A stretch of DNA of 64,000 nt from Laetmonice hystrix (Eukaryota). Within the stretch, counting starts at the first letter, position 1. Every line of letters begins with the position of its first letter. The translations under genes and the position numbers were made by a program. The notes beneath the pieces were generated by a model that worked only from the letters and a program-made list of their open reading frames with translations, searched no databases and was not told where the DNA came from. Shown piece by piece: positions 18,582 to 57,336 of this stretch. Where the stretch lies: assembly GCA_965235115.1 (NCBI GenBank), contig OZ249437.1:10974001-11038000 (forward strand). Reading direction: 5' to 3'.

Positions 18582-18737
18582 ATTGTCCGTAATGTATTTC
18601 ATTGCGCATAATGAATGGTCTGAGACTTGAATATCCGCAATCTATACGTCACTTCCGGCCCCAACTTTCCTTCACCTTCCCCGACTCTCACTCGGTCACT
18701 TTCCTCTCCGCCACACTCCGACACACACGTCTTTTAC
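18582..18737 (+). repeat. Split direct repeat A1 (156 bp)
   Basis: Identical by eye to A2 at 22730-22885. Confidence 0.95.
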
Positions 18738-18743
18738 ACTGCA

Positions 18744-19982
18744 ATGGGGCGCACAAAGAAAACGATAACACGGCGACACACACCACTCGAAGAAACCGAC
18801 GAGGAAAGCCAGCCGCAGACCCCTCGGGCTCAGCGTCGAACAACCGTCGCAAGTAATGCCGACGCAATTGGACAAGTCAGCCACAGAGTTAACAATATTG
18901 AAAGTAAGCTAACAAACATTACAGAACTTCTCACTCGACTAAGCGGCCAACTACCACCGCCTGACCACACCACTCCAGAAGCTCGTCATACTACCACACC
19001 ACCCCGACTGGAACCCGCCGACGCCTCGTCTGAACTTGGAGGAACAGCACAAGGCCAACGGGTCACCAACTCCCGCCAGCCCGACATACCAAGCACCCCG
19101 CCGGCTGACAACCGACACTGCGAAACAGCCGACAGGACCGCCCACGCCCCTCAGGCACTTTCACTACCGGAAAGGTTCACCGGCCTGGGGGCAGACGATA
19201 GGACGCTGGCTGCCCGTCATTCCTCGCCACCCAAGTCCCACCCCAGCAGACCCACAACGCACCACGAGCGCGCGGGGAACCCGCCAACCACCGTAGCACA
19301 GCTCGAGGCGGACCCAATATTAGCACGTCGCGTGGCTGACGCTCTCCACGCCGTAGTGTCCCCATTCACTACAGCTGGAAAAGGTAAGCAGTCTGGAGCA
19401 TTTCCACACCAGTTTGTGACGCGGGGACCAAAGCATGTCAAACTCGAACTTGCAGAGTGCACTATCGCCGAATATGTATGGGGTTTCACTCAAATGACGA
19501 GGCTTGTCCAGGACAATGAAACTGTAAATCTTATGAACAGACATATTGAGCAAGTTGTTAATGACGCCAGGACATATGACTGGCTATCAGTCAGGGCCTG
19601 GTCGGAAGAGGTGTGCGCGCAGATTTTCGACAAGAAGCTCTCATGGTCCAACGCATATGAAATTGACCGCCTTCAGACTCGCCTATCACACATGGGGACA
19701 CAAAACTCCACACCGCAACAGAACGATAACAATACGACCGTTAGCGTCGACATACCAGACTTTCTCAAATCTGCTAAGCCTGCACCACCTTGTCGTGCGT
19801 ATCAGCGAGGAACATGCATCCAACACTCACACCACGTTGCGAATGGATACCGTCAACTCCACGTATGCGAATTCTGCCTCTTGAAAAAGTGTTTGTTCCT
19901 TCCTCACTCTCTTAAGGTATGCCGTTCAAAAACATTCGATAGGCAGGACAACCAACCATCCTCATTGGGGTTTCCGAATTGA
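18744..19982 (+). CDS. Ngaro ORF1 (Gag-like) with C-terminal Cys/His zinc-finger region
   Basis: 412-aa ORF from the first ATG after repeat A1. Ends in CRAYQRGTC...H..CEFC...H....C, typical of DIRS/Ngaro Gag. Confidence 0.85.
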   Translation: MGRTKKTITRRHTPLEETDEESQPQTPRAQRRTTVASNADAIGQVSHRVNNIESKLTNITELLTRLSGQLPPPDHTTPEARHTTTPPRLEPADASSELGGTAQGQRVTNSRQPDIPSTPPADNRHCETADRTAHAPQALSLPERFTGLGADDRTLAARHSSPPKSHPSRPTTHHERAGNPPTTVAQLEADPILARRVADALHAVVSPFTTAGKGKQSGAFPHQFVTRGPKHVKLELAECTIAEYVWGFTQMTRLVQDNETVNLMNRHIEQVVNDARTYDWLSVRAWSEEVCAQIFDKKLSWSNAYEIDRLQTRLSHMGTQNSTPQQNDNNTTVSVDIPDFLKSAKPAPPCRAYQRGTCIQHSHHVANGYRQLHVCEFCLLKKCLFLPHSLKVCRSKTFDRQDNQPSSLGFPN

Positions 19983-22156
19983 CTGGGGAGTCCGATACTC
20001 GCCCAGGAAACCATTGTCGCTCCACCACTCCGACCGTCTCCGAGACTCTGCCCCGCACTGTAATTTCTCCGTACCACTCTATAGCAACCCTGAATACTTG
20101 TACACTGAACGAACCTCTCACCGAACCTCTGAAGACGGGGCTCTGTATCCCTCAAGGGCCCCACACTGTAATTTCTCCGTACCATTCCACAGCAACCCTG
20201 AATACTGGCACACTGAACGAACCTTTTACCGAACCTCGGAAGACGGGGCTCTGTATCCCTCAGGGATCCCACACCGCAGCCGCCACCACACTGGGCACAG
20301 TTCACCTTACACCCCGATCTACTAAAACTAAACCGCACATCGACTCCGAAATCGTTCCTAATGTACCTTACCGATTAGACTTGAATTCCCGACATTCAAA
20401 TTTTATTTCTCCACAACAGTATAGCCACTATATACATGTCATGTGGCCACGTCCCACTGAACAGGCTCTCACCGCCGCCCCCTATCATCTCCAGCTATAC
20501 CGGGACGTTCAAAAATCTGGCCTTCCTAATTATTTAGCTATTAGACGTATCGTCCCATCGGATCTTAAATTTCACAACTGGGAGAAGAACCTCACAGGCT
20601 ATATCGACTGTGAAATTATTGACTTCTTAAAGTATGGATGGCCTTCATCATATACGGGTATAACTCCTCCTACCTCATCTGCCTCTAACCACCCCAGCGC
20701 CCTCAGACATCCGTACGCCGTCGATAATTTCATCGCTAAAGAGCTAGGAAAACAAGCCCTTCTGGGACCCTTTTCATCTAACCCGTTCGACTCTTGGTTC
20801 CAGACCTCGCCCCTTATGACACGGGATAAGAAGTCTTCCATTCTAAACCATGCCTCACTAGAAAAACGCGTCATCACTGATCTCTCTTACCCTCCCGGCA
20901 ACAGCGTTAATGACGGTATCTCCAGGAACAATTTTCAAGGAACTTACAGAGCCTACACCCTTCCGACACCACTCGACCTAGCTGACATTATTCTTCAACA
21001 CGGGGTTGGCTGTTTTCTCTTTAAATCTGACCTCGAGCGCGCTTACCGTCAGCTTCGTATCGACCCACTGGACTACCCTCTTATGGGCATTCGCCATAAT
21101 GGCCGTGTGTATATTGACATCTGTCCGTCATTTGGCTGTCGATCGTCCGGCGCGGCACAGCAGCGGGTCAGTAATGCCATCTCCTTTGTCATGAAACAAC
21201 GTGGACATTTTATTCTGGCTTATGTCGACGACTTTGCAGGAGTTGCCTCTACGCACTCACAAGCACAGTTTGCTTTGGAAACTTTCGAGGCGGTATGTGA
21301 TGACTTGGGACTCAAACTGGCGCAAGGTAAAACCAGTCCCCCCGCAACCAGCATGGAATGGCTCGGCTTCACCTTCAATACCGTCGAGATGACCATAACA
21401 ATCCCTGACCACAAACTCGCCGAACTAATACATGAGGCACGAGCATGGAAAAATAAGAAATACGCCACCAGGAATGAATATCAGTCCATCGCCGGAAAAC
21501 TTAATCATCTTAGCCAAGTCATCGCCCCCGCCCGGAAGTTCATGGCGAGAATTCTTGCCGCACTGCGTCAGGCATCTCCCGATACTCCTTCTCTTGTCCC
21601 TACAGAGGTCCAGAAGGACATTCAATGGTTTATTGACTTCGCCGTTACATGCAATCGGAAGCGATTAATACTTGACGACCTTCCGGAATTCCCTATTGAG
21701 TGTGATGCCTGCCCATCCGGGGCGGGAGCCTATTCGACTTCACGGTTCTACACGTTTAAATTTCCTAGTCATTATACCTCACACTACCATATTTCACAAC
21801 TCGAAGCTATAAACGTTGTAATGGCAGTTAAAACTCTCGTTCCTCAACGCCTGGTAGCTCACACGGTCAGGGTAAAAACGGACAATATGGCCGCAATGTA
21901 TGCGCTGAACACAGGAAAAACAAAGGACCCCGTACTCGCCGCATGCGCACGTGAGCTATGGATGGTCGCAGCCACGAATCAGCTTGAAATAATGCTATAT
22001 CACCAGCCGGGGGTCGACTTAGTTCTGGCGGACGCACTAAGTCGCTACCATTTAAGCAAAGCATATGCCGACACTGCGGAGGCCCTCGTGTCACAGTACG
22101 GTCTTTCTCGCCTTATACCTGTGGAGCTAGACTGTATTTTCACATCCGAATTATGA
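19979..22156 (+). CDS. Ngaro ORF2: reverse transcriptase plus RNase H
   Basis: 725 open codons (frame open from 19943), in the -1 frame relative to ORF1. RT motifs KSDLERAYRQL, PSFGCRSSG and YVDDF. RNase H motifs ECDACPSGAG, QLEAINV, KTDNMAA and LADALSR. Confidence 0.95.
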   Translation: MTGESDTRPGNHCRSTTPTVSETLPRTVISPYHSIATLNTCTLNEPLTEPLKTGLCIPQGPHTVISPYHSTATLNTGTLNEPFTEPRKTGLCIPQGSHTAAATTLGTVHLTPRSTKTKPHIDSEIVPNVPYRLDLNSRHSNFISPQQYSHYIHVMWPRPTEQALTAAPYHLQLYRDVQKSGLPNYLAIRRIVPSDLKFHNWEKNLTGYIDCEIIDFLKYGWPSSYTGITPPTSSASNHPSALRHPYAVDNFIAKELGKQALLGPFSSNPFDSWFQTSPLMTRDKKSSILNHASLEKRVITDLSYPPGNSVNDGISRNNFQGTYRAYTLPTPLDLADIILQHGVGCFLFKSDLERAYRQLRIDPLDYPLMGIRHNGRVYIDICPSFGCRSSGAAQQRVSNAISFVMKQRGHFILAYVDDFAGVASTHSQAQFALETFEAVCDDLGLKLAQGKTSPPATSMEWLGFTFNTVEMTITIPDHKLAELIHEARAWKNKKYATRNEYQSIAGKLNHLSQVIAPARKFMARILAALRQASPDTPSLVPTEVQKDIQWFIDFAVTCNRKRLILDDLPEFPIECDACPSGAGAYSTSRFYTFKFPSHYTSHYHISQLEAINVVMAVKTLVPQRLVAHTVRVKTDNMAAMYALNTGKTKDPVLAACARELWMVAATNQLEIMLYHQPGVDLVLADALSRYHLSKAYADTAEALVSQYGLSRLIPVELDCIFTSEL

Positions 22157-31444: not shown

Positions 31445-31756
31445 GCTTCCCGAGAATACGGACCAGCAGCTTACTGACTGCTCGCTTCCCGAGAATACGG
31501 ACCAGCAGCTTACTGACTGCTCGCTTCCCGAGAATACGGACCAGCAGCTTACTGACTGCTCGCTTCCCGAGAATACGGACCAGCAGCTTACTGACTGCTC
31601 GCTTCCCGAGAATACGGACCAGCAGCTTACTGACTGCTCGCTTCCCGAGAATACGGACCAGCAGCTTACTGACTGCTCCCTTCCCGAGAATACGGACCAG
31701 CAGCTTACTGACTGCTCGCTTCCCAAGAATACGGACCCGCAGCTTACTGACTGCTC
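31445..31756. repeat. Minisatellite, 39-bp unit x8 (GCTTCCCGAGAATACGGACCAGCAGCTTACTGACTGCTC)
   Basis: Directly visible head-to-tail copies with no spacers. Only the last two units vary. Confidence 0.97.
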
Positions 31757-32903: not shown

Positions 32904-33046
32904 AGGCCATCTTTACATAATGGAGGCCAACTTTACATAATTGAGGCCATCTTTACATAATGGAGGCCAGCTTTACATAATGGAGGCCAGCTTTACATAA
33001 TGGAGGCCAGCTTTACATAATGGAGGCCAGCTTTACATAATGGAGG
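32904..33046. repeat. Minisatellite, 20-bp unit x~7 (AGGCCAGCTTTACATAATGG)
   Basis: Directly visible tandem copies. Confidence 0.95.
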
Positions 33047-34801: not shown

Positions 34802-34861
34802 TCAGTACTCTTCCTCGTCATTGGGGTCCAGACCGTCATCCTCTGGAGCTGCGAAACCATC
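34802..34861 (-). CDS. EB1: EB1 terminal coding exon (DGFAAPEDDGLDPNDEEEY*)
   Basis: TTTCAG acceptor. Acidic tail ending in the EEY CAP-Gly-binding motif and TGA. The spliced CDS totals 825 nt (274 aa). Confidence 0.93.
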   Translation of the reverse strand, partial: DGFAAPEDDGLDPNDEEEY

Positions 34862-35968: not shown

Positions 35969-36121
35969 CTCTGTTGCATATAAAATATCCAGGATGTTTT
36001 TCACGACAGGAAGTTCACTGCTCTCCGTCTCTTGGCAAAGGACTTCAATGTCTCTCAACTTGCCAAAGTAGAAATCCCTTTCTTTCTCCAGGCTCTCAAC
36101 AGAGACCCGTGTCTCTTCAAG
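35969..36121 (-). CDS. EB1: EB1 exon 6, EBH domain (LEETRVSVESLEKERDFYFGKLRDIEVLCQ...LDILYATE)
   Basis: Contains the hallmark LEKERDFYFGKLR motif. CACAG acceptor, GAG|GTACA donor. 153 nt. Confidence 0.97.
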
Positions 36122-36362: not shown

Positions 36363-36487
36363 CTTTGCAGTGAGCTCCTCCACAACTTTAGGATCCCCTC
36401 CTCCTCCTCCTCCTCCCATTCGAGGTGCCGGTGGTGTTCGCGTCACACCTGCAGATGGCGATCTCTGGTTGGCTGCTGGCCTGGAGG
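36363..36487 (-). CDS. EB1: EB1 exon 5, linker to coiled-coil start (SRPAANQRSPSAGVTRTPPAPRMGGGGGGGDPKVVEELTAK)
   Basis: TTACAG acceptor, AAG|GTGAA donor. 125 nt, phase 1/0, consistent with the flanking exons. Composition is typical of the EB linker. Confidence 0.88.
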
Positions 36488-38164: not shown

Positions 38165-38963
38165 ACACAGAACTGTACACAGCAAAGTGTCCATCCCCTT
38201 CAACAGCATCCTTGGTTATAGTATGGTGTGGGTGTGGACAGGTCGGGTATGGGGTCTTTTAACTGCAATAACATCAATACACAGAACTGTACACAGCAAA
38301 TTGTCCATCCCCTTCAACAGCATCCTTGGTTATAGTATGGTGTGGGTGTGGACAGGTCGGGTATGGGGTCTTTTAACTGCAATAACATCAATACACAGAA
38401 CTGTACACAGCAAAGTGTCCATCCCCTTCAACAGCATCCTTGGTTATAGTATGGTGTGGGTGTGGACAGGTCGGGTATGGGGTCTTTTAACTGCAATAAC
38501 ATCAATACACAGAACTGTACACAGCAAATTGTCCATCCCCTTCAACAGCATCCTTGGTTATAGTATGGTGTGGGTGTGGACAGGTCGGGTATGGGGTCTT
38601 TTAACTGCAATAACATCAATACACAGAACTGTACACAGCAAAGTGTCCATCCCCTTCAACAGCATCCTTGGTTATAGTATGGTGTGGGTGTGGACAGGTC
38701 GGGTATGGGGTCTTTTAACTGCAATAACATCAATACACAGAACTGTACACAGCAAAGTGTCCATCCCCTTCAACAGCATCCTTGGTTATAGTATGGTGTG
38801 GGTGTGGACAGGTCGGGTATGGGGTCTTTTAACTGCAATAACATCAATACACAGAACTGTACACAGCAAAGTGTCCATCCCCTTCAACAGCATCCTTGGT
38901 TATAGTATGGTGTGGGTGTGGACAGGTCGGGTCTGGGGTCTTTTAACTGCAATAACATCAATA
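38165..38963. repeat. Tandem repeat, 114-bp unit x7, in the EB1 intron between exons 4 and 5
   Basis: Units start at 38165, 38279, 38393, 38507, 38621, 38735 and 38849 and are nearly identical. Confidence 0.97.
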
Positions 38964-40007: not shown

Positions 40008-40227
40008 CTTTTGCTGGGGCCCTGGCGGCTGGTGGGGCCGCTACTCTGTTAGTTCGGGCCATCCCCATTGGCTTTTTACTCGCACCACCCAGTGCTACGA
40101 ATCCTCGCTTCTCCTCAGGATCATAATCTGCGCCATCATAGTTTGCATCGAAGAACTTCTTGAACCACTGGACGAACTCAAAGTTGTCCTGAAAGCGTCC
40201 CTTCACCAGCCTGTCTACTGGTACAAC
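40008..40227 (-). CDS. EB1: EB1 exon 4 ([32 protein letters not shown]...RAPAK)
   Basis: CH-domain C-terminal half plus start of the linker. TGCAG acceptor, G|GTACC donor. 220 nt, phase 0/1. Confidence 0.96.
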
Positions 40228-43200
40228 CTGCAGCAGAAAAGGACTTTCATGGAAATAAATGATCATATCTTCATATCATAAATAATCAAAAGGCAAACTT
40301 CTTTATAGTTTTGTTTTCGCCAGTGCTTACACAATTCGAATTTCATATTATCATTTAATGTTCTTATTTGATTATTCATTCCATCTTCTTTAAAGAAGCA
40401 ATCGGTTACCATTTATAATAATATCAAGTCAGAGACAAATCTCTTAGATCTCCTTTTCCATCTAGAAATAACAATATATCAGGCAGAACCCTGGCACTAC
40501 AGATCTTGAGCACCTTATGGTAACGCCTTCCCTATGTAGGGTTTTAATTGTATAACACTTAGTTCTACCACTGGCACTTTGGGATCAAATTCACATACAA
40601 CGACTTACAGACTACTGACAAAATCTTCAGGTCAGACAGATAAACATGTCAAAGCCTGGTTCAGACTACATACCAATGAAAACATCACGGATATCTGGAC
40701 CCAGTTCGTAAAAAAACTTAACATCTTGTTTTTTACGAACTGGGCCACCTGGACAGGTCGTGCAGGATGCCCACGATCGTCCATCCACGAACGGGACAAA
40801 CGGGTCTGTTACTTACCAACCTGTGTTGTTCTCCATTCTACTCCCATGGCCCTCGATCAGCAGTAGCTGACTACAAAACCCCACCCTACATGAATCCACC
40901 ACCTGACGGCCACAGCCAGGCCAACTCTCAAAACATTTCTGGCCCACTGATCTCTTCAACATTTCAACTTCCAAAAGGAGATGATAAAGTGAATAAAAGC
41001 GAGGTGAGGGTTAACACAAGAGTTGTTTATCTACAAGAGAACTTGGCGGGGAAGAAAAACATAAATCACTGTCACACAATTTTGGATCACTCATTAGACT
41101 TTCTCCACCCACCCACTCCCCTTCTCCTCCCAATAAAGAAAAAAGGAAAGGATTTTATCATGCTATATGATATATCTTAATTATTTTTCAGGTTTGCTCA
41201 AGGGAAATAAGAAAAAAAGTAAAACATTGGAGAGAGAGAGGGAAAATCCATGAGAGGGTAAAAAAGAAATGACAAAAAAGGAAAGGCAGGCTCTGACTGT
41301 CTCGAACACAATGCACAGAATCTTTAACTGAACAGGCTGGCATGACACAAGCAGGTCATCTGTCCCATATCAATGACTGTCACTGGTCTGTATGTCATTA
41401 CGTGACTCATCCTCAACGTTTACAATCATCCTGCACAACACTTTATTCTGGTCTCTGACCCATCTACTGTGAACTGTAAACCGCTCTTGGCTCAATTAAT
41501 GATTTGTTTTCAAGATGCCATCAATGTTACACTGTAGATTATCTACGGGATTAAGGTCACTGCCAAAGCATTAATGCTGAAGTCAACCTCTTTTAAGCCT
41601 TACATTAAAGTAACTTAGTTAAAATCTAGAACCGACACATAATGTTAACATATATCATGCACAATGCAACGAACATGACTTCTATTTATAAATGTACTAA
41701 CTACGACATAACATACTGGCAAAACATGAAGTTGTACTCTATTAAAACCTTATGGAGCCTACAAAAGTACAATCACAAAATCTGGTTTGAGCATATATCA
41801 TGAATAGAGTACCAACAGAGTTACTACACTGCACTACTTTAGGTATGCCTGAATACTGCCGGTAGAGCTAAACAGACTACATGCACTTCAAAATCCAAGA
41901 AATGATAAAAATTTGATCAGAGGAGCATTCAAGCACGTCACAATTTTCAGGTGATTCAAGTACTGGCAGTCCTGGGGGTTATAATGCACCAAGGACAAAG
42001 TTAGCTCAGGCCGTAACTGTTTAGTAGCCGAAACATGTACATTTGTACTTTCATCACACATACTGAGCATTTTATTTTTAATTTTTTTCTTGGGGGTTTG
42101 GGGGGGGGGGGTATTTTCTTCAACTTTAGATTTTAGTCTCACAATACGCGGCCTGCAATTTAGTAGTATATTAAAGTAACTGTACGCAAGACATTGAAAT
42201 ACAATGCAATTTTTTCCATCAATCACGTGACCGAATGATAAAAATAGTTTGTCATAGTCTCACATGATATGCTAAAAATATAACTTGACATAATACAGAT
42301 AGTAATTCTAACTTTAACATCAACAACGTTAATACATTAATGGGGCAAATAAGCAAGGAGCCTTATTTTCTTTGAAAACTTTTCATAAAAAGGGAAAAGA
42401 ATATCTCAAGAATACTTAAACTGAAATAATGATGAAAAAGTTGGTGGAAAATCCTCATGCCTCTTTTTGCCAAACATAACTAGAAGGCGTCCCACCCATT
42501 GGTCACTGCCTGACAAGGTTACACAGAGTCTGGAGAGACTTCTATTGGTCAGCCACCACCACACAGCCAGCCGACGGGCTGACCAGCATACCACATTCCC
42601 GAGTCCTGGAATCACGGCCACAGACCATAGACAACCCAAGCGGGGGCCCACACACCTGATTCTAGACATGTTCAACAATATGGTTATGTTGCCTGCTCAC
42701 AGAATATCATGGAGTATTACAGCAAACAGCCACATACAACGGTTTGCCCTTTAATAAATTTCTTCATGCCACCAGGAGACTTCGTCCTAATCTGGCATAC
42801 CATACCGACTTTCATTCGATACACCGTGTCTTTAAACTTAAAATTTTTAGACTTACAATTTACAGATAGGTGCCCACAATTACGTTTTATTATTACTAAT
42901 ATTCTTTATTAATTCTGATAATTACCATAATACAAACAATGACGAGTAATGACAACTCAATCATCTTGATTATCCCGAATTGGTTTTGCTAACGTTTTCA
43001 GAATTAATCACGTCAGAATCAGATGTTTGGATCCAGTCTGGGAACTAACTGCAAGCCAAGACGTCACAAACAAAACCCTCAAACAAAACAATACGTTTAC
43101 AAAGCTACAGGGGGCGAGGATTCAGCAGCGCTTACGAAGAGATGCGAAGAACGGGAAGAGATGCGAGGAATTGGAAGAATGTGAGGAATGCCTAGAAATG

Positions 43201-43280: not shown

Positions 43281-43387
43281 CTTGTCAATGCCCATTTTGT
43301 GAAAGGCGCCTTGTAGTACCTTGAAGTTGTTTATGAACTCGTGTTCTAATACTGTATTGAATTTCACCCTTTTTAAATTTATGGAAC
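43281..43387 (-). CDS. EB1: EB1 alternative exon 3B ([35 protein letters not shown])
   Basis: Polypyrimidine tract with TTTCAG acceptor and AAG|GTGAG donor. 107 nt, same phase and homologous position as exon 3A. Confidence 0.92.
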
Positions 43388-45651
43388 CTGAAAGTGTACA
43401 ATATACAAGAAAAGAAGAGCGTTTTTTACTGCTGGTAAGACAACTGTGGCTCAGAGTGCTGGAGTAAGCTGGAACAGACAAATGACAACAAGGATGTCTC
43501 ATCTAGTTTGCAGCCGTTACCACATCACCACCACTCGGACTTACTTGACGTCTTCCACCAGGAACTGGGCGAGGAGAACTGCGGCGGCGGTAGGGTCTGT
43601 GGACCAAGGCTTACCTATGTACAAAACGTAGATCGGTCCAGTACAGGATCAAAGGGACACCTCTGGATGTCATGGTGGCGACGTCTCCTAAAACTTCTCA
43701 TGCTTGGAGAACTTGTGAGAATCATTGCTAGGTGACAGTCGAGGTGGTGGTACCTGCCTAGTGGAGGACTCTGGTACCCGAGTGAAACTTCACTTTGTGC
43801 TGGTTCGGGGACACACCTCCTCGTAGGCCTGTGCTCCGGCCTTTGTATTGGGACCCATCTCAGAGGGCCATTCGGTATACACTTTTTCATTGACCTGGGA
43901 GTTCTCAGCCCTCGCAGTGCTACACCTCAAAGTGCCCCAATCTTCAGACCTCCCAACAGGACTTGCACAGAGAGGTACAAACCTTAGAGGTGACACTTGA
44001 CGTAACGCAAATGCTCCAGCCCTCCCAGCCAGACTTGTGGCTCTGTTGGGAAGCTAAACCTTGAATTTTCAGACTTGGTTCTGATGGCTCTGAAAGCTAC
44101 TTCCTTATCACAAGATCCATGCAGGACTACATGTGAACTACAGACACAATCTTCTCTGGCTAGGAGGCATTTCAAGGACACACTAAAGGGTCACACCATG
44201 CACTCGCTAACATCACACAATGGGAACAGCCTCTAGATATCTGCAGATGGAAACTGTAAATATCTACACTTCCTCAAATTTAACTCGAATTTAACCATGG
44301 CAAGTGCCATGGTTGCCCCCCTCACTTGGCGTGGTGCCTTCAATATTTGCAGTGTCTGAGGCAATAAAATGCTCTGGGTGCCCCAGGCTGAACGAGCACC
44401 CCACTCAGTCCACTCACGTCAAAGGGTGCTGGATCATCACCATCCTAGATTCCTAGAAAACTTGCCATGAAGTTGATGCCCCACAAACTTGCCTTGGTGC
44501 ACTTAAATTTCTGCTTAGACCTAAGGCAACACTTGCCTTGCCCTAAGATAAATTAAAATTCTCGAACTCTGAGATTAAAATCCAGGATAGCAGGAGGGAG
44601 GAGTCTGCCCAACTAATGCAGCAAATGAATTGGTTGTCAGACACAAAGAGGTCCGATATACAAGCTAAACGTATCATGCACCTTAACACATTAGTAGGCT
44701 GACATTTCATGTTAATGGGGGTGTCATGTCCGTGCTCCATTTCCTGGACCAACTGGCATGCTGCCGCTGCTGCTGCTGCTGCTTGGGTGGGGGGGGGGGG
44801 GGGGGGGTTGGAGGGAATCTGAATTTGGTCTGTCTATTGGAGGTACCGGTATTCTCATGCCATCTGCCTACTGAAGTCCCGACTACAATAATCCCATTTA
44901 TAAATTATAAGATGGTTTTGCAGGGAATTCATGAATGATTATCCCACATTTTTTAATTGATATTGAAATTTATATTCTAATTTGTTTTGCCTCTGAATTG
45001 TTATTCTTGCAGTATCTCAATCTAACAATTATTTATTTTTTTTAGATCTCCATTTACTCTTGTTATATAGATGAAGATCCTACTCCTCTTTAGAAAACCT
45101 TTCTAAAATGTCCTTCACATATGTCAGAGTAGCCTCAAAGGATGTTAACTGGGCAAGCTATAAACGGTACACAAAGTGTGTGTATTGCATACGTGAAATA
45201 TTAACGAGTGAATAGTATATATTGTGTAAAGGTTGTTGCATTTTGTGCAGTGAAACGCTAAGCTGAGTTCATCTCTAATCATGTAGGCAGTAATGAGGTC
45301 ATCATCCCATTAATTTATTTCCTGACAATTGCCATGGTAATCAGTTCCCAGAGCGGGCAGACAGATCCCTGGTGATCTATGGTATTGGGACATGAAGAAT
45401 TCAATGGATTGCTGGTCTAAAAGCTTTGTCCAAGGTAGAGTGTGGCCCAGTCGTGGTAGTGCTGTGGTTGGCAGCTAGTCACACCCATCTTCCAAATCCA
45501 TCTGACCAGGAGCGGGGATGTAGGGACCCAGGGAATAGAAGCACTCCTAAACGTGGCTACAGATGCTGAAATGATGCACCTGTATCACCTAGGGAAGAAA
45601 AGAATAGTTGCCATGGAGACTGGACACTGGCAGCACGCAGCGTTTTCTCAC

Positions 45652-45758
45652 CTTATCCACTGAACACTTCTTGAACGCCCCCTGAAGAATCTTGAAATTC
45701 TGAATGAACTCATGTTCTAATTTCGTGTCGAATTTCACCCTTTTCATTGGTAGGCATC
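45652..45758 (-). CDS. EB1: EB1 alternative exon 3A (CLPMKRVKFDTKLEHEFIQNFKILQGAFKKCSVDK)
   Basis: TTTCAG acceptor and AAG|GTGAG donor. 107 nt, phase 1/0. CH-domain residues 55-89. Confidence 0.92.
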
Positions 45759-46766
45759 CTGAAACCACACACGTATCAGACATGTCATGGACACACAATG
45801 CTTGAATCATTGGGGAAGGCAATATTCACAATGTTTCCAAGAACATTGTTCATATTGCATCAAATCCAAATCAGGAAGGTCATCCATAATTATCATATAA
45901 AGGGTCACAAGCAGCTATAAAAAAAAGTTTCTACATTACCAAAGATTCTACTCAGTGGAAGTATCAGTATTAAATAATTTTTTAATTGTTTATCACATGC
46001 AGGCGTTAATTAAATTTTGAATTAAGAACTTAACATTATCAAAGCCCAAAGACAGCACTGTCTACTGTGTCTCTACTTGGGTTTAACCACGTTCCAGTTA
46101 CCGGTATATTTGGTTATCAGAGCAATAAAAGGTTGGTCCCGGAAATATATATCTAAACAGGAAATGAAGGTTTGCTTGATTAAAAGGCTGTGGGAGAAAG
46201 ACTGGCATTGATTAACTCTTTGGTAAAACTTAATGAAACAGAAAATAATATCACTTAAAGTCCAACAGACATCAAAATTTACATGAAATTTAGTGCCAGA
46301 TCCTGATAATACATGTAATTTGTTGTTGTTTAACTTAAAGGAGCGGTTATTGTACAAGAATATGAACTGTGTGAAAGTCGTTTTAAAGACCAATTCCCCT
46401 AGTGACGTCATCAGGGGCAATGGTAAAGAATAGGGAGGAGTGAGACTGTGATGAGGCGCGGGATTCGAATTTTCAATATTTTTCTAAATTGAGAGGACTT
46501 CTCAGAAAACCTGTCAGGGATACGGTTACAACTCAAAGTGATCTATCTAGATCAGTAAAGTTACCTATGTGATGTCAGTTGCACTTTAATCACATCTGTA
46601 ATTATTTATACATCTCAAAATCAACTTTCTCATTTACTCAATAAGGACCAGCTGTAGGATTCTTTTGAAGTTCACCTGCGACTCTCTTGGGAGGATGCTA
46701 ATACTACCTGTAATCGGGACAAAATATCTGTAAATTCCCCGTAATGCCCTTCTACAAAACTAATGC

Positions 46767-49770: not shown

Positions 49771-49809
49771 CTGGGAATAGCATGTCCATGAATTGGCAGT
49801 ATGCAGCAC
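49771..49809 (-). CDS. EB1: EB1 coding exon 2, 39-nt microexon (G-AAYCQFMDMLFP-G)
   Basis: TTTCTCTAG acceptor and G|GTACG donor. Encodes the invariant AAYCQFMDMLFP motif. Phase 1/1. Confidence 0.95.
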
Positions 49810-57215: not shown

Positions 57216-57336
57216 CTGAGGACAGTTCCTCTATCTTGCTAAAACTTGATTGTAAACTCTCATTCACCCAAATCAACATTTCATGTCGACTAAGGTTGTC
57301 TGTCGTCGCACTTGTGTTATATACGTTTACAGCCAT
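57216..57336 (-). CDS. EB1: EB1/MAPRE coding exon 1 ([41 protein letters not shown])
   Basis: Near-identical to the known EB1 N-terminus. ATG at 57336. Preceded by a polypyrimidine tract and TAG acceptor (exon starts 57343). Ends at a G|GTAAG donor. 121 coding nt, phase 1. Confidence 0.97.

What the first reader, a model, noticed from the sequence alone, without database searches (positions are those of the whole stretch)
43281..45758. Mutually exclusive exon pair rewrites part of the EB1 microtubule-binding CH domain
Seen in sequence: two homologous exons 2.3 kb apart, each exactly 107 nt with identical phase (1/0), canonical splice sites and no stops. They share 23 of 35 residues, and many conserved residues use different synonymous codons (CAT/CAC, CTT/CTA, GGG/GGC, GAT/GAC and others), implying an old duplication with purifying selection on both. 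Because 107 is not a multiple of 3, including both or neither shifts the frame, so only one-or-the-other gives full-length EB1. Numbering aligns with human EB1. 3A keeps K66 and K83, whereas 3B has V66 and H83 and also differs at 55-58, 64, 73, 77 and 85-87. Established knowledge: K59/K60 and K66/L67 lie on the tubulin-contacting surface of the EB CH domain, and K66 is a reported acylation site in human EB1. Inference: one gene makes two EB proteins with different plus-end tracking, a splicing-based analogue of the vertebrate EB1/EB2/EB3 paralogues. I know of no description of such an exon pair in EB genes.
Basis: partly seen in the sequence, partly recalled or inferred. Interest (0 to 1): 0.85.

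Follow-up and report, generated by a model that had tools for sequence, protein, structure and literature searches.

The report
Ancient alternative exon pair in EB1
The only EB1 (microtubule tip-tracking) gene of this invertebrate genome has two interchangeable 107-base versions of one exon of its microtubule-binding domain; the same pair occurs in annelids and molluscs, where both versions are transcribed, so it is a real and old splicing switch that public annotation already records but no paper I found describes.

Summary
A minus-strand, 7-exon, 274-aa EB1/MAPRE gene (ATG 57336, stop 34802) has two homologous 107-nt exons, 3A at 45758-45652 and 3B at 43387-43281. Both have AG/GT sites and phase 1/0. 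They share 23/35 residues, and 12 of 24 conserved codons differ synonymously (dS saturated, dN 0.29). Including both gives V-P-stop; skipping both shifts the frame.

It is the only EB gene found in the 627-Mb assembly.

The same tandem 107-nt pair lies between exons 2 and 4 in two annelid-type loci, an oyster, an abalone and two rotifer-type loci. RefSeq lists equal-length isoform pairs that differ only at residues 54/55-86 in four mollusc genera checked by direct comparison; three more genera show the same two exon types. Independent oyster RNA assemblies hold both spliced forms.

The conserved difference is residue 83: always K in the upstream type, never K in the downstream type.

Junction reads for this species could not be obtained, because the single read-laying run was lost to a filter. 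A functional difference is untested. No paper on this was found. Insects instead alternate the next exon.

Verdict: a genuine, conserved mutually exclusive exon pair of moderate interest.

The parts
57216..57336 (-). EB1 coding exon 1 (ATG at 57336; 40 codons + 1 nt; donor gtaagt)
49771..49809 (-). EB1 exon 2 (39 nt, phase 1/1; ...GAAYCQFMDMLFP + first base of Gly54)
45652..45758 (-). Exon 3A, the upstream 'A-type' alternative exon (107 nt, residues 54-89, K66, K83, S86)
43388..45651 (-). 2264-nt intron between the two alternative exons (contains a (CTG)n/(G)n microsatellite near 44766-44808)
43281..43387 (-). Exon 3B, the downstream 'B-type' alternative exon (107 nt, residues 54-89, V66, H83, G86)
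40008..40227 (-). EB1 exon 4 (220 nt, phase 0/1; [32 protein letters not shown]... and the start of the linker)
36363..36487 (-). EB1 exon 5 (125 nt, linker, Gly run)
35969..36121 (-). EB1 exon 6 (153 nt; coiled coil / EB-homology motif, Pfam PF03271, E 8e-20)
34802..34861 (-). EB1 last coding exon (DGFAAPEDDGLDPNDEEEY-stop)

Best explanation
This is a genuine, ancient pair of mutually exclusive exons in the single EB1/MAPRE gene of a protostome invertebrate. On my tree the protein falls in neither the mollusc nor the arthropod clade, and the organism is probably a lophotrochozoan.

Splicing joins exon 2 to either 3A or 3B and then to exon 4. This gives two 274-aa proteins that are identical except at 12 residues between positions 55 and 87 of the microtubule-binding CH domain. 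That the reading frame enforces exclusivity follows directly from the sequence: both exons together give a stop two codons into 3B, and neither gives a frameshift. I infer that such transcripts are removed by nonsense-mediated decay.

The duplication predates the split of this lineage, annelids and molluscs. The upstream copy (A) keeps the ancestral Lys83 and has acquired Pro57 and Ser/Thr86. The downstream copy (B) keeps ancestral-looking 57 and 85-86 but never has Lys83.

The following is inference, not shown. The two isoforms differ in how the CH domain binds or is regulated at the microtubule end. Possible causes are loss of a conserved, modifiable lysine at 83 and changes in the 55-66 loop that borders the left-hand tubulin contact. 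Cells would set the A:B ratio by regulated splicing.
For: Anatomy.

Single EB gene, and only these two exon-3 copies in 627 Mb.

Selection: dS saturated, dN 0.29; 12 of 24 conserved codons differ synonymously.

Same architecture elsewhere. Tandem 107-nt copies with AG/GT sites lie between exons 2 and 4 in L001 (unknown, annelid-like), L003 (Lamellibrachia satsuma), L005 (Crassostrea virginica), L006 (Haliotis), L004 (Brachionus plicatilis) and L002 (rotifer-like; its first copy is 113 nt).

Use of both in relatives:
- RefSeq equal-length isoform pairs differ only at residues 54/55-86 in Haliotis (3 species), Patella (2), Saccostrea (2) and C. virginica.
- Magallana gigas, Ostrea edulis and Argopecten show the same two exon types in isoforms of equal length; those pairs were compared in the exon-3 segment only.
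- Complete uninterrupted 269-aa ORFs lie on 1.6-2.0 kb Logan contigs of independent runs. The B type was on 12 contigs, including SRR8489870, ERR10659121 and ERR12311778; the A type was on SRR2002962.

Orthology of A and B across phyla:
- The genomic order is the same (A upstream) in the window, both annelid loci, the oyster and the abalone.
- Position 83 is K in 9/9 A copies, non-K in 9/9 B copies and K in 6/6 single-copy outgroup sequences. Scallop B types have Q/E83.
- In the exon tree, win_A sits with oyster and annelid A (80/90) and win_B with annelid B (89/76). The A/B labels need 2 and 4 changes against shuffled means of 7.4 and 7.5.
- Annelid orthologous copies are 84% identical in DNA; paralogous copies are 65-75%.

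Plausibility of functional tuning: small conservative CH-domain substitutions set the different tip positions of vertebrate EB2 versus EB1/EB3 (PMC6398475). Residues 59, 60, 67 and 69 contact the microtubule (PMC5584162). K66 and K83 are listed modification sites of human EB1 (PMC10470552).
Against: - There is no RNA junction evidence from this species.
- Run X4 looks transcriptome-like: it holds 0.74 of the sampled words of the 3' exon region against 0.20 of the intron-rich stretch.
- The 36-column exon tree cannot statistically exclude independent duplications: the AU test for win_A+win_B as sisters gives p = 0.26.
- The rotifer pairs do not follow the K83 rule. They may be an independent duplication or too diverged to tell.
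- Whether residue 83 touches tubulin was not established.
- The RefSeq isoforms are automatic models. Only for oysters did I confirm both forms in independent transcript assemblies.
Confidence: 0.85

Rival explanations
1. One of the two exons, most plausibly 3B with its unusual V66/H83, is an unused relic in this species, and only one isoform is made.
For: No junction reads were obtained for this organism. V66 is unique to this lineage among the copies compared.
Against: Both exons keep an open frame, the exact 107-nt length and good AG/GT sites with polypyrimidine tracts. Synonymous sites are saturated while 23/35 residues are kept, which a neutral relic would not show. 3B carries the same B-type signature (non-K83, G86) as the expressed B exons of annelids and molluscs.
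Confidence: 0.05
2. The pair mainly serves dosage control rather than protein diversity: regulated double inclusion or double skipping makes stop-containing transcripts that are degraded, which tunes EB1 level.
For: Double inclusion gives a stop within 2-5 codons in the window, both annelid loci, the oyster and the abalone. No RNA element enforcing strict exclusivity was found.
Against: Dosage control would not require both exons to keep CH-domain coding capacity and a conserved type-specific signature across phyla. Both single-inclusion mRNAs are assembled as complete ORFs in oysters. This reading can coexist with the main one as a minor side effect.
Confidence: 0.06
3. The exon pairs in different phyla arose by independent, convergent duplications of the same exon, so the window's pair is younger than it looks.
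For: The AU tests do not reject a tree with win_A and win_B as sisters (p 0.26). The rotifer pairs lack the K83/non-K83 signature. Arthropods independently duplicated the neighbouring exon, which shows the gene is prone to this.
Against: Synonymous sites between 3A and 3B are saturated. The order A-then-B and the 83/86/57 signature are shared by the window, annelids and molluscs. The best tree groups copies by type, not by species.
Confidence: 0.1

Closest known systems
RefSeq isoform pairs of mollusc EB1 ('microtubule-associated protein RP/EB family member 1(-like) isoform X1/X2' of Magallana gigas, Crassostrea virginica, Saccostrea, Ostrea edulis, Haliotis, Patella, Argopecten)
   Same: The same exon (residues 54-89) is swapped. 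The length is 107 nt, it sits between exons 2 and 4, the order is A-then-B, and the signature is K83 versus non-K83.
   Different: These are other phyla or classes, about 55-62% protein identity to the window's EB1. The introns between the copies are shorter (0.7-1.0 kb against 2.3 kb). They exist only as automatic annotation; I found no paper that discusses them.
Arthropod EB1 alternative exon 4 (insect RefSeq isoforms; gene models that string both copies together, such as Ladona fulva KAG8236852, Cyphomyrmex and Apis cerana models)
   Same: The same gene family and the same principle: alternative homologous exons rewrite part of the CH domain of a single EB1 gene.
   Different: A different exon is involved. 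The isoforms diverge from residue 90 onwards (the rest of the CH domain plus linker), the versions differ in length, and exon 3 appeared only once in the insect proteins I examined. This covers I90, K100, F105 and E106, the residues that distinguish vertebrate EB2 from EB1/EB3 (PMC6398475). The exon-3 pair does not.
Vertebrate EB1/EB2/EB3 (MAPRE1-3) paralogues
   Same: Several EB proteins with slightly different CH domains coexist, and small substitutions change their position and affinity at the microtubule tip (PMC6398475).
   Different: Vertebrates achieve this with separate genes that also differ in linker and tail. Here one gene varies 12 residues only, and the tail that recruits partners is identical in both isoforms.
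Classic tandem-duplicated mutually exclusive exons, e.g. Drosophila betaTub97EF exons 4B/4C and the MXE sets catalogued in Kassiopeia
   Same: The pair meets the published predictive criteria: neighbouring exons of similar length, sequence homology, conserved splice sites and the same reading frame (PMC3923563). Like betaTub97EF, it alters an internal segment of a conserved cytoskeletal protein (bioRxiv 10.1101/185827).
   Different: No competing RNA pairing (docking/selector) or steric constraint was detected. The only exclusivity mechanism visible in the sequence is frame incompatibility.

Membership tests
EB1/MAPRE (RP/EB) family | N-terminal calponin-homology microtubule-binding domain | tested here: met
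   Exon 3A aligns to residues 55-89 of solved EB1/EB3 CH domains at E about 1e-10. The spliced protein is about 60% identical over its full length to proteins that carry PF00307+PF03271.
EB1/MAPRE (RP/EB) family | C-terminal EB-homology motif (Pfam PF03271) after a coiled coil | tested here: met
   Exon 6 hits PF03271 at E 7.8e-20, 71 bits against a cut-off of 27. The genome-wide scan finds it only here.
EB1/MAPRE (RP/EB) family | Acidic C-terminal tail ending in EEY/F | tested here: met
   The last exon ends ...DPNDEEEY-stop.
Mutually exclusive exon cluster (tandem exon duplication type; criteria of Hatje & Kollmar, PMC3923563) | Neighbouring exons with similar length, sequence homology, conserved splice sites and the same reading frame | tested here: met
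   107 nt versus 107 nt, 65% nt and 66% aa identity, AG/GT at both, phase 1/0 at both, and no exon between them.
Mutually exclusive exon cluster (tandem exon duplication type; criteria of Hatje & Kollmar, PMC3923563) | Exactly one exon of the cluster is present in mature transcripts of this organism | not testable with these tools
The feature is met in relatives: RefSeq pairs and oyster transcript contigs of both types. Frame logic forbids productive double inclusion or double skipping.
Mutually exclusive exons governed by competing RNA pairing (Dscam / 14-3-3 type docking-selector) | Conserved intronic complementary elements next to the variable exons | tested here: not met
   Only the exons are conserved between the two annelid loci. 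The best inverted repeat touching an exon in the window (40660-40682 with 45741-45763, 23 nt, 83%) has a 12-nt perfect core, and about 3 such matches are expected by chance in 9.5 kb.

The most novel reading that the evidence does not exclude
The exon pair is a lysine-83 switch more than half a billion years old (my dating, assuming the annelid-mollusc split is that old). Annelids, molluscs and this lineage all keep one EB1 isoform with the otherwise invariant, modifiable Lys83 and one isoform that has lost it. The two would differ measurably in microtubule-end recognition or in regulation by lysine modification. Together with the arthropod exon-4 alternatives and the vertebrate EB1/2/3 genes, this would mean animals diversified the EB CH domain three times independently by three genetic routes.
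Probability: 0.35. Interest if true: 0.65.

Novelty: new member of a known kind. Interest (0 to 1): 0.5.

Why it matters
EB proteins are the hub of the microtubule plus-end network. How cells obtain EB variants with different tip behaviour has been studied almost only through the three vertebrate paralogues.

Here evolution has isolated a minimal change. The exon swap alters 8 to 14 residues, the tail stays identical, and the swap has been conserved across phyla. One position, residue 83, is always lysine in one form and never lysine in the other.

That gives a clean, directly testable handle. One can ask which CH-domain surface tunes end recognition or regulation, using A and B isoforms and reciprocal residue-83 mutants in comet assays. 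It also suggests that diversifying the EB CH domain is a recurrent need, met by splicing in spiralians and arthropods and by gene duplication in vertebrates.

There is a practical point too. Several deposited gene models (Lamellibrachia, Brachionus, many insects) wrongly string both copies into one protein.

Tried and rejected
Both sequencing-run searches returned only four runs of one study, none recorded as RNA.

2. Close relatives of the window's organism. Three protein searches gave nothing above about 63% identity (BLAST; 68% to Lamellibrachia over the trimmed tree columns). A full-length tree places the protein outside molluscs and arthropods but otherwise leaves it unresolved. The organism was not identified.

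3. Steric-hindrance exclusivity. The Lamellibrachia gene model suggested a very short intron between the copies. The genomic locus shows 278 nt, and other species have 84-2264 nt, so I rejected this.

4. Docking/selector RNA pairing. No conserved intronic block exists between the two annelid loci. The inverted repeats in the window are at chance level.

5. Statistical proof of a single origin. The AU tests on 36 columns were inconclusive.

6. K66 as the key isoform difference. Rejected as a conserved feature.

7. Literature. Four searches for EB1/MAPRE mutually exclusive or alternative CH-domain exons found nothing relevant. The zebrafish mapre1a ovary-specific exon is a different event, judged from the position of its RT-PCR primers downstream of the CH domain. 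A search for EB1 K83 found only a list of modification sites.

8. Whether residue 83 contacts tubulin. Neither Maurer 2012 nor Howes 2017 names residue 83 in the passages I searched. My guessed PMC id for Zhang 2015 was not held.

Full report
**What is in the sequence**

The finding lies in a minus-strand gene. Motif scans and reading of the splice sites give seven coding exons:
- e1 57336-57216
- e2 49809-49771
- e3A 45758-45652
- e3B 43387-43281
- e4 40227-40008
- e5 36487-36363
- e6 36121-35969
- e7 34861-34802, ending in the stop codon

. With either exon 3 the product is 274 aa. It has the EB1 hallmarks. The CH-domain segment aligns to solved EB1/EB3 structures at E about 1e-10. Exon 6 hits Pfam PF03271 at 8e-20. 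The protein ends in ...DEEEY.

It is correct in every particular. Both exons are 107 nt, follow tttcag, precede gtgag, start in phase 1 and end in phase 0. They share 70/107 bases and 23/35 residues (24/36 with the split glycine). Twelve of the 24 conserved codons differ synonymously. Nei-Gojobori dN is 0.29, and dS is saturated and undefined. Joining 3A to 3B reads ...VDK-V-P-stop, and skipping both shifts the frame. The numbering equals human EB1/EB3 numbering. A six-frame search of the whole 627-Mb assembly with 3B finds only 3B and 3A. PF03271 is found only in this gene. So there is one EB gene with exactly two versions of this exon, and no other exon of the gene is duplicated in the window.

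**RNA evidence in this species**

I could not get it. The two run searches returned four runs of one study, none labelled RNA. One of them, X4, behaves like a transcriptome: it holds 0.74 of the sampled words of the 3' exon region but only 0.20 of the intron-rich stretch. Use of both exons in this organism is therefore inferred, not shown.

**Comparative evidence: genomic loci**

An exhaustive profile search with 3B returned, as its three best hits, genomic ORFs that each contain two exon-3 copies. I fetched those contigs and the loci of named proteins. Complete EB1 genes with the same exon structure, and a tandem pair of 107-nt exons with AG/GT sites between exons 2 and 4, are present in:
- L001, an unknown annelid-like eukaryote
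- L003, the tubeworm Lamellibrachia satsuma
- L005, Crassostrea virginica
- L006, Haliotis
- L004, the rotifer Brachionus plicatilis
- L002, rotifer-like, with a first copy of 113 nt

. Double inclusion gives a stop within five codons in the annelids and molluscs.

**Comparative evidence: isoforms and transcripts**

RefSeq lists isoform pairs of identical length that differ only at residues 54/55-86, which is exactly this exon. I confirmed this by full-length comparison in three Haliotis species, two Patella, two Saccostrea and C. virginica. Magallana gigas, Ostrea edulis and Argopecten show the same two exon types in isoforms of equal length, but I compared those only in the exon-3 segment.

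For the Pacific oyster, both forms exist as complete uninterrupted 269-aa ORFs on 1.6-2.0 kb contigs assembled from independent sequencing runs. The B type is on 12 contigs, including SRR8489870, ERR10659121 and ERR12311778. The A type is on SRR2002962 and others. Because the gene has introns, these contigs are spliced mRNAs.

**Are the pairs the same pair?**

The upstream copy in the window, both annelid loci, the oyster and the abalone is of one type (A) and the downstream copy of another (B). Column by column, position 83 is Lys in all nine A copies, never Lys in the nine B copies (H, T, G or A; Q/E in scallops), and Lys in six single-copy arthropod and vertebrate-like sequences. Position 86 is S/T in A and G in B. 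Position 57 is mostly P in A and Q/N/H in B.

A maximum-likelihood tree of the 36 columns groups win_A with oyster and annelid A copies (80/90) and win_B with annelid B copies (89/76). The type labels are far more clustered than shuffled labels. However, AU tests cannot reject alternative trees. Between the two annelid loci, orthologous copies are 84% identical in DNA, paralogous ones 65-75%, and nothing intronic is conserved.

The rotifer pairs do not follow the K83 rule and may be independent. A full-length tree puts the window's protein outside both molluscs and arthropods. Its highest identity is 68%, to the annelid. An earlier unverified note on this genome calls it lophotrochozoan. I conclude that the duplication most likely predates the annelid-mollusc split. 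This is well supported but not statistically proven.

**How it works**

Shown by sequence: only one-or-the-other inclusion keeps the frame.

Inferred: mis-spliced forms are removed by nonsense-mediated decay, and the A:B ratio is set by splicing regulators.

I found no sign of steric exclusion, since the introns between the copies are 84-2264 nt. I also found no conserved docking/selector RNA pairing.

**Likely function**

The exon encodes residues 54-89. According to Howes et al. 2017, this span includes EB3 positions 59, 60, 67 and 69, which mediate microtubule contact on the left-hand side of the CH domain (PMC5584162). Those four residues are identical in 3A and 3B. The differences sit beside them (55-58, 64, 66) and at the end of the following helix (83, 85-87).

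K66 is acetylated, ubiquitylated and crotonylated in human EB1, and K83 is also a listed modification site (PMC10470552, PMC11217610).

Roth et al. 2018 showed that a handful of conservative CH-domain substitutions account for the different tip position and nucleotide-state preference of EB2 versus EB1/EB3 (PMC6398475). This makes a functional difference between A and B plausible, but it remains untested. I could not establish whether residue 83 lies near tubulin.

**Comparison with what is known**

This is a standard tandem-duplication type of mutually exclusive exon cluster and meets all sequence criteria of Hatje and Kollmar (PMC3923563). In insects the EB1 isoforms instead diverge from residue 90 onward, that is, in the next exon. 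Several deposited insect models string both versions together. Vertebrates have three genes.

Four literature searches found no description of an EB1 or MAPRE mutually exclusive exon. The zebrafish mapre1a ovary exon is a different event, judged from its RT-PCR primer positions downstream of the CH domain. The phenomenon is therefore present in public annotation but, as far as I could search, undescribed.

**Verdict**

This is a real feature and a new member of a known kind. It is moderately interesting because of its depth of conservation, the clean K83 signature, and the parallel with arthropod splicing and vertebrate paralogues.

Noticed in passing
window 38165-38963 (intron between EB1 exons 4 and 5): A minisatellite of 7.0 copies of a 114-nt unit, 99% identical. 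It is open in several frames, so it shows up as long spurious ORFs.
   Followed up: partly
window 18627-22156 (+): A retroelement with two long ORFs (451 and 725 aa). The second hits reverse transcriptase PF00078 (E 9e-12). It lies downstream of the EB1 gene on the opposite strand.
   Followed up: partly
window 31445-31756 and 32904-33046: Two further tandem arrays: 39 nt x 8 copies at 98% identity, and 20 nt x 7 copies at 95%.
   Followed up: no
window 44766-44808: A (CTG)n run followed by a long G run inside the intron between exons 3A and 3B.
   Followed up: no
window 40660-40682 and 45741-45763: A 23-nt, 83% complementary inverted repeat. One arm covers the acceptor and first 18 nt of exon 3A; the other lies in the intron upstream of exon 4. 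The perfect core is only 12 nt, which is about what chance gives in 9.5 kb.
   Followed up: partly
Proteins P0113, P0156, P0161, P0204 and RefSeq pairs P0196/P0234, P0256/P0322, P0281/P0272, P0289/P0309: Insect EB1 genes have alternative versions of the next exon (residues 90 to about 180). Many deposited gene models wrongly include both versions in tandem.
   Followed up: partly
P0166 (Lamellibrachia satsuma) and P0260 (Brachionus plicatilis); loci L003 and L004: The deposited gene models string both exon-3 copies (or one and a half) into a single protein of 320 or 321 aa. This is a mis-annotation of the alternative pair.
   Followed up: yes
L002 9973-10087 (unknown rotifer-like contig): The first exon-3 copy is 113 nt instead of 107 nt, two extra codons in the same phase.
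   Followed up: no
same genome, other windows (notes s1-313652, s1-313653, s1-310943, s1-310952, s1-319916, s1-322021, s1-306521, s1-306526): First-stage readers flagged many other candidate mutually exclusive exon pairs in this genome. If they are real, tandem exon duplication is common here.
   Followed up: no
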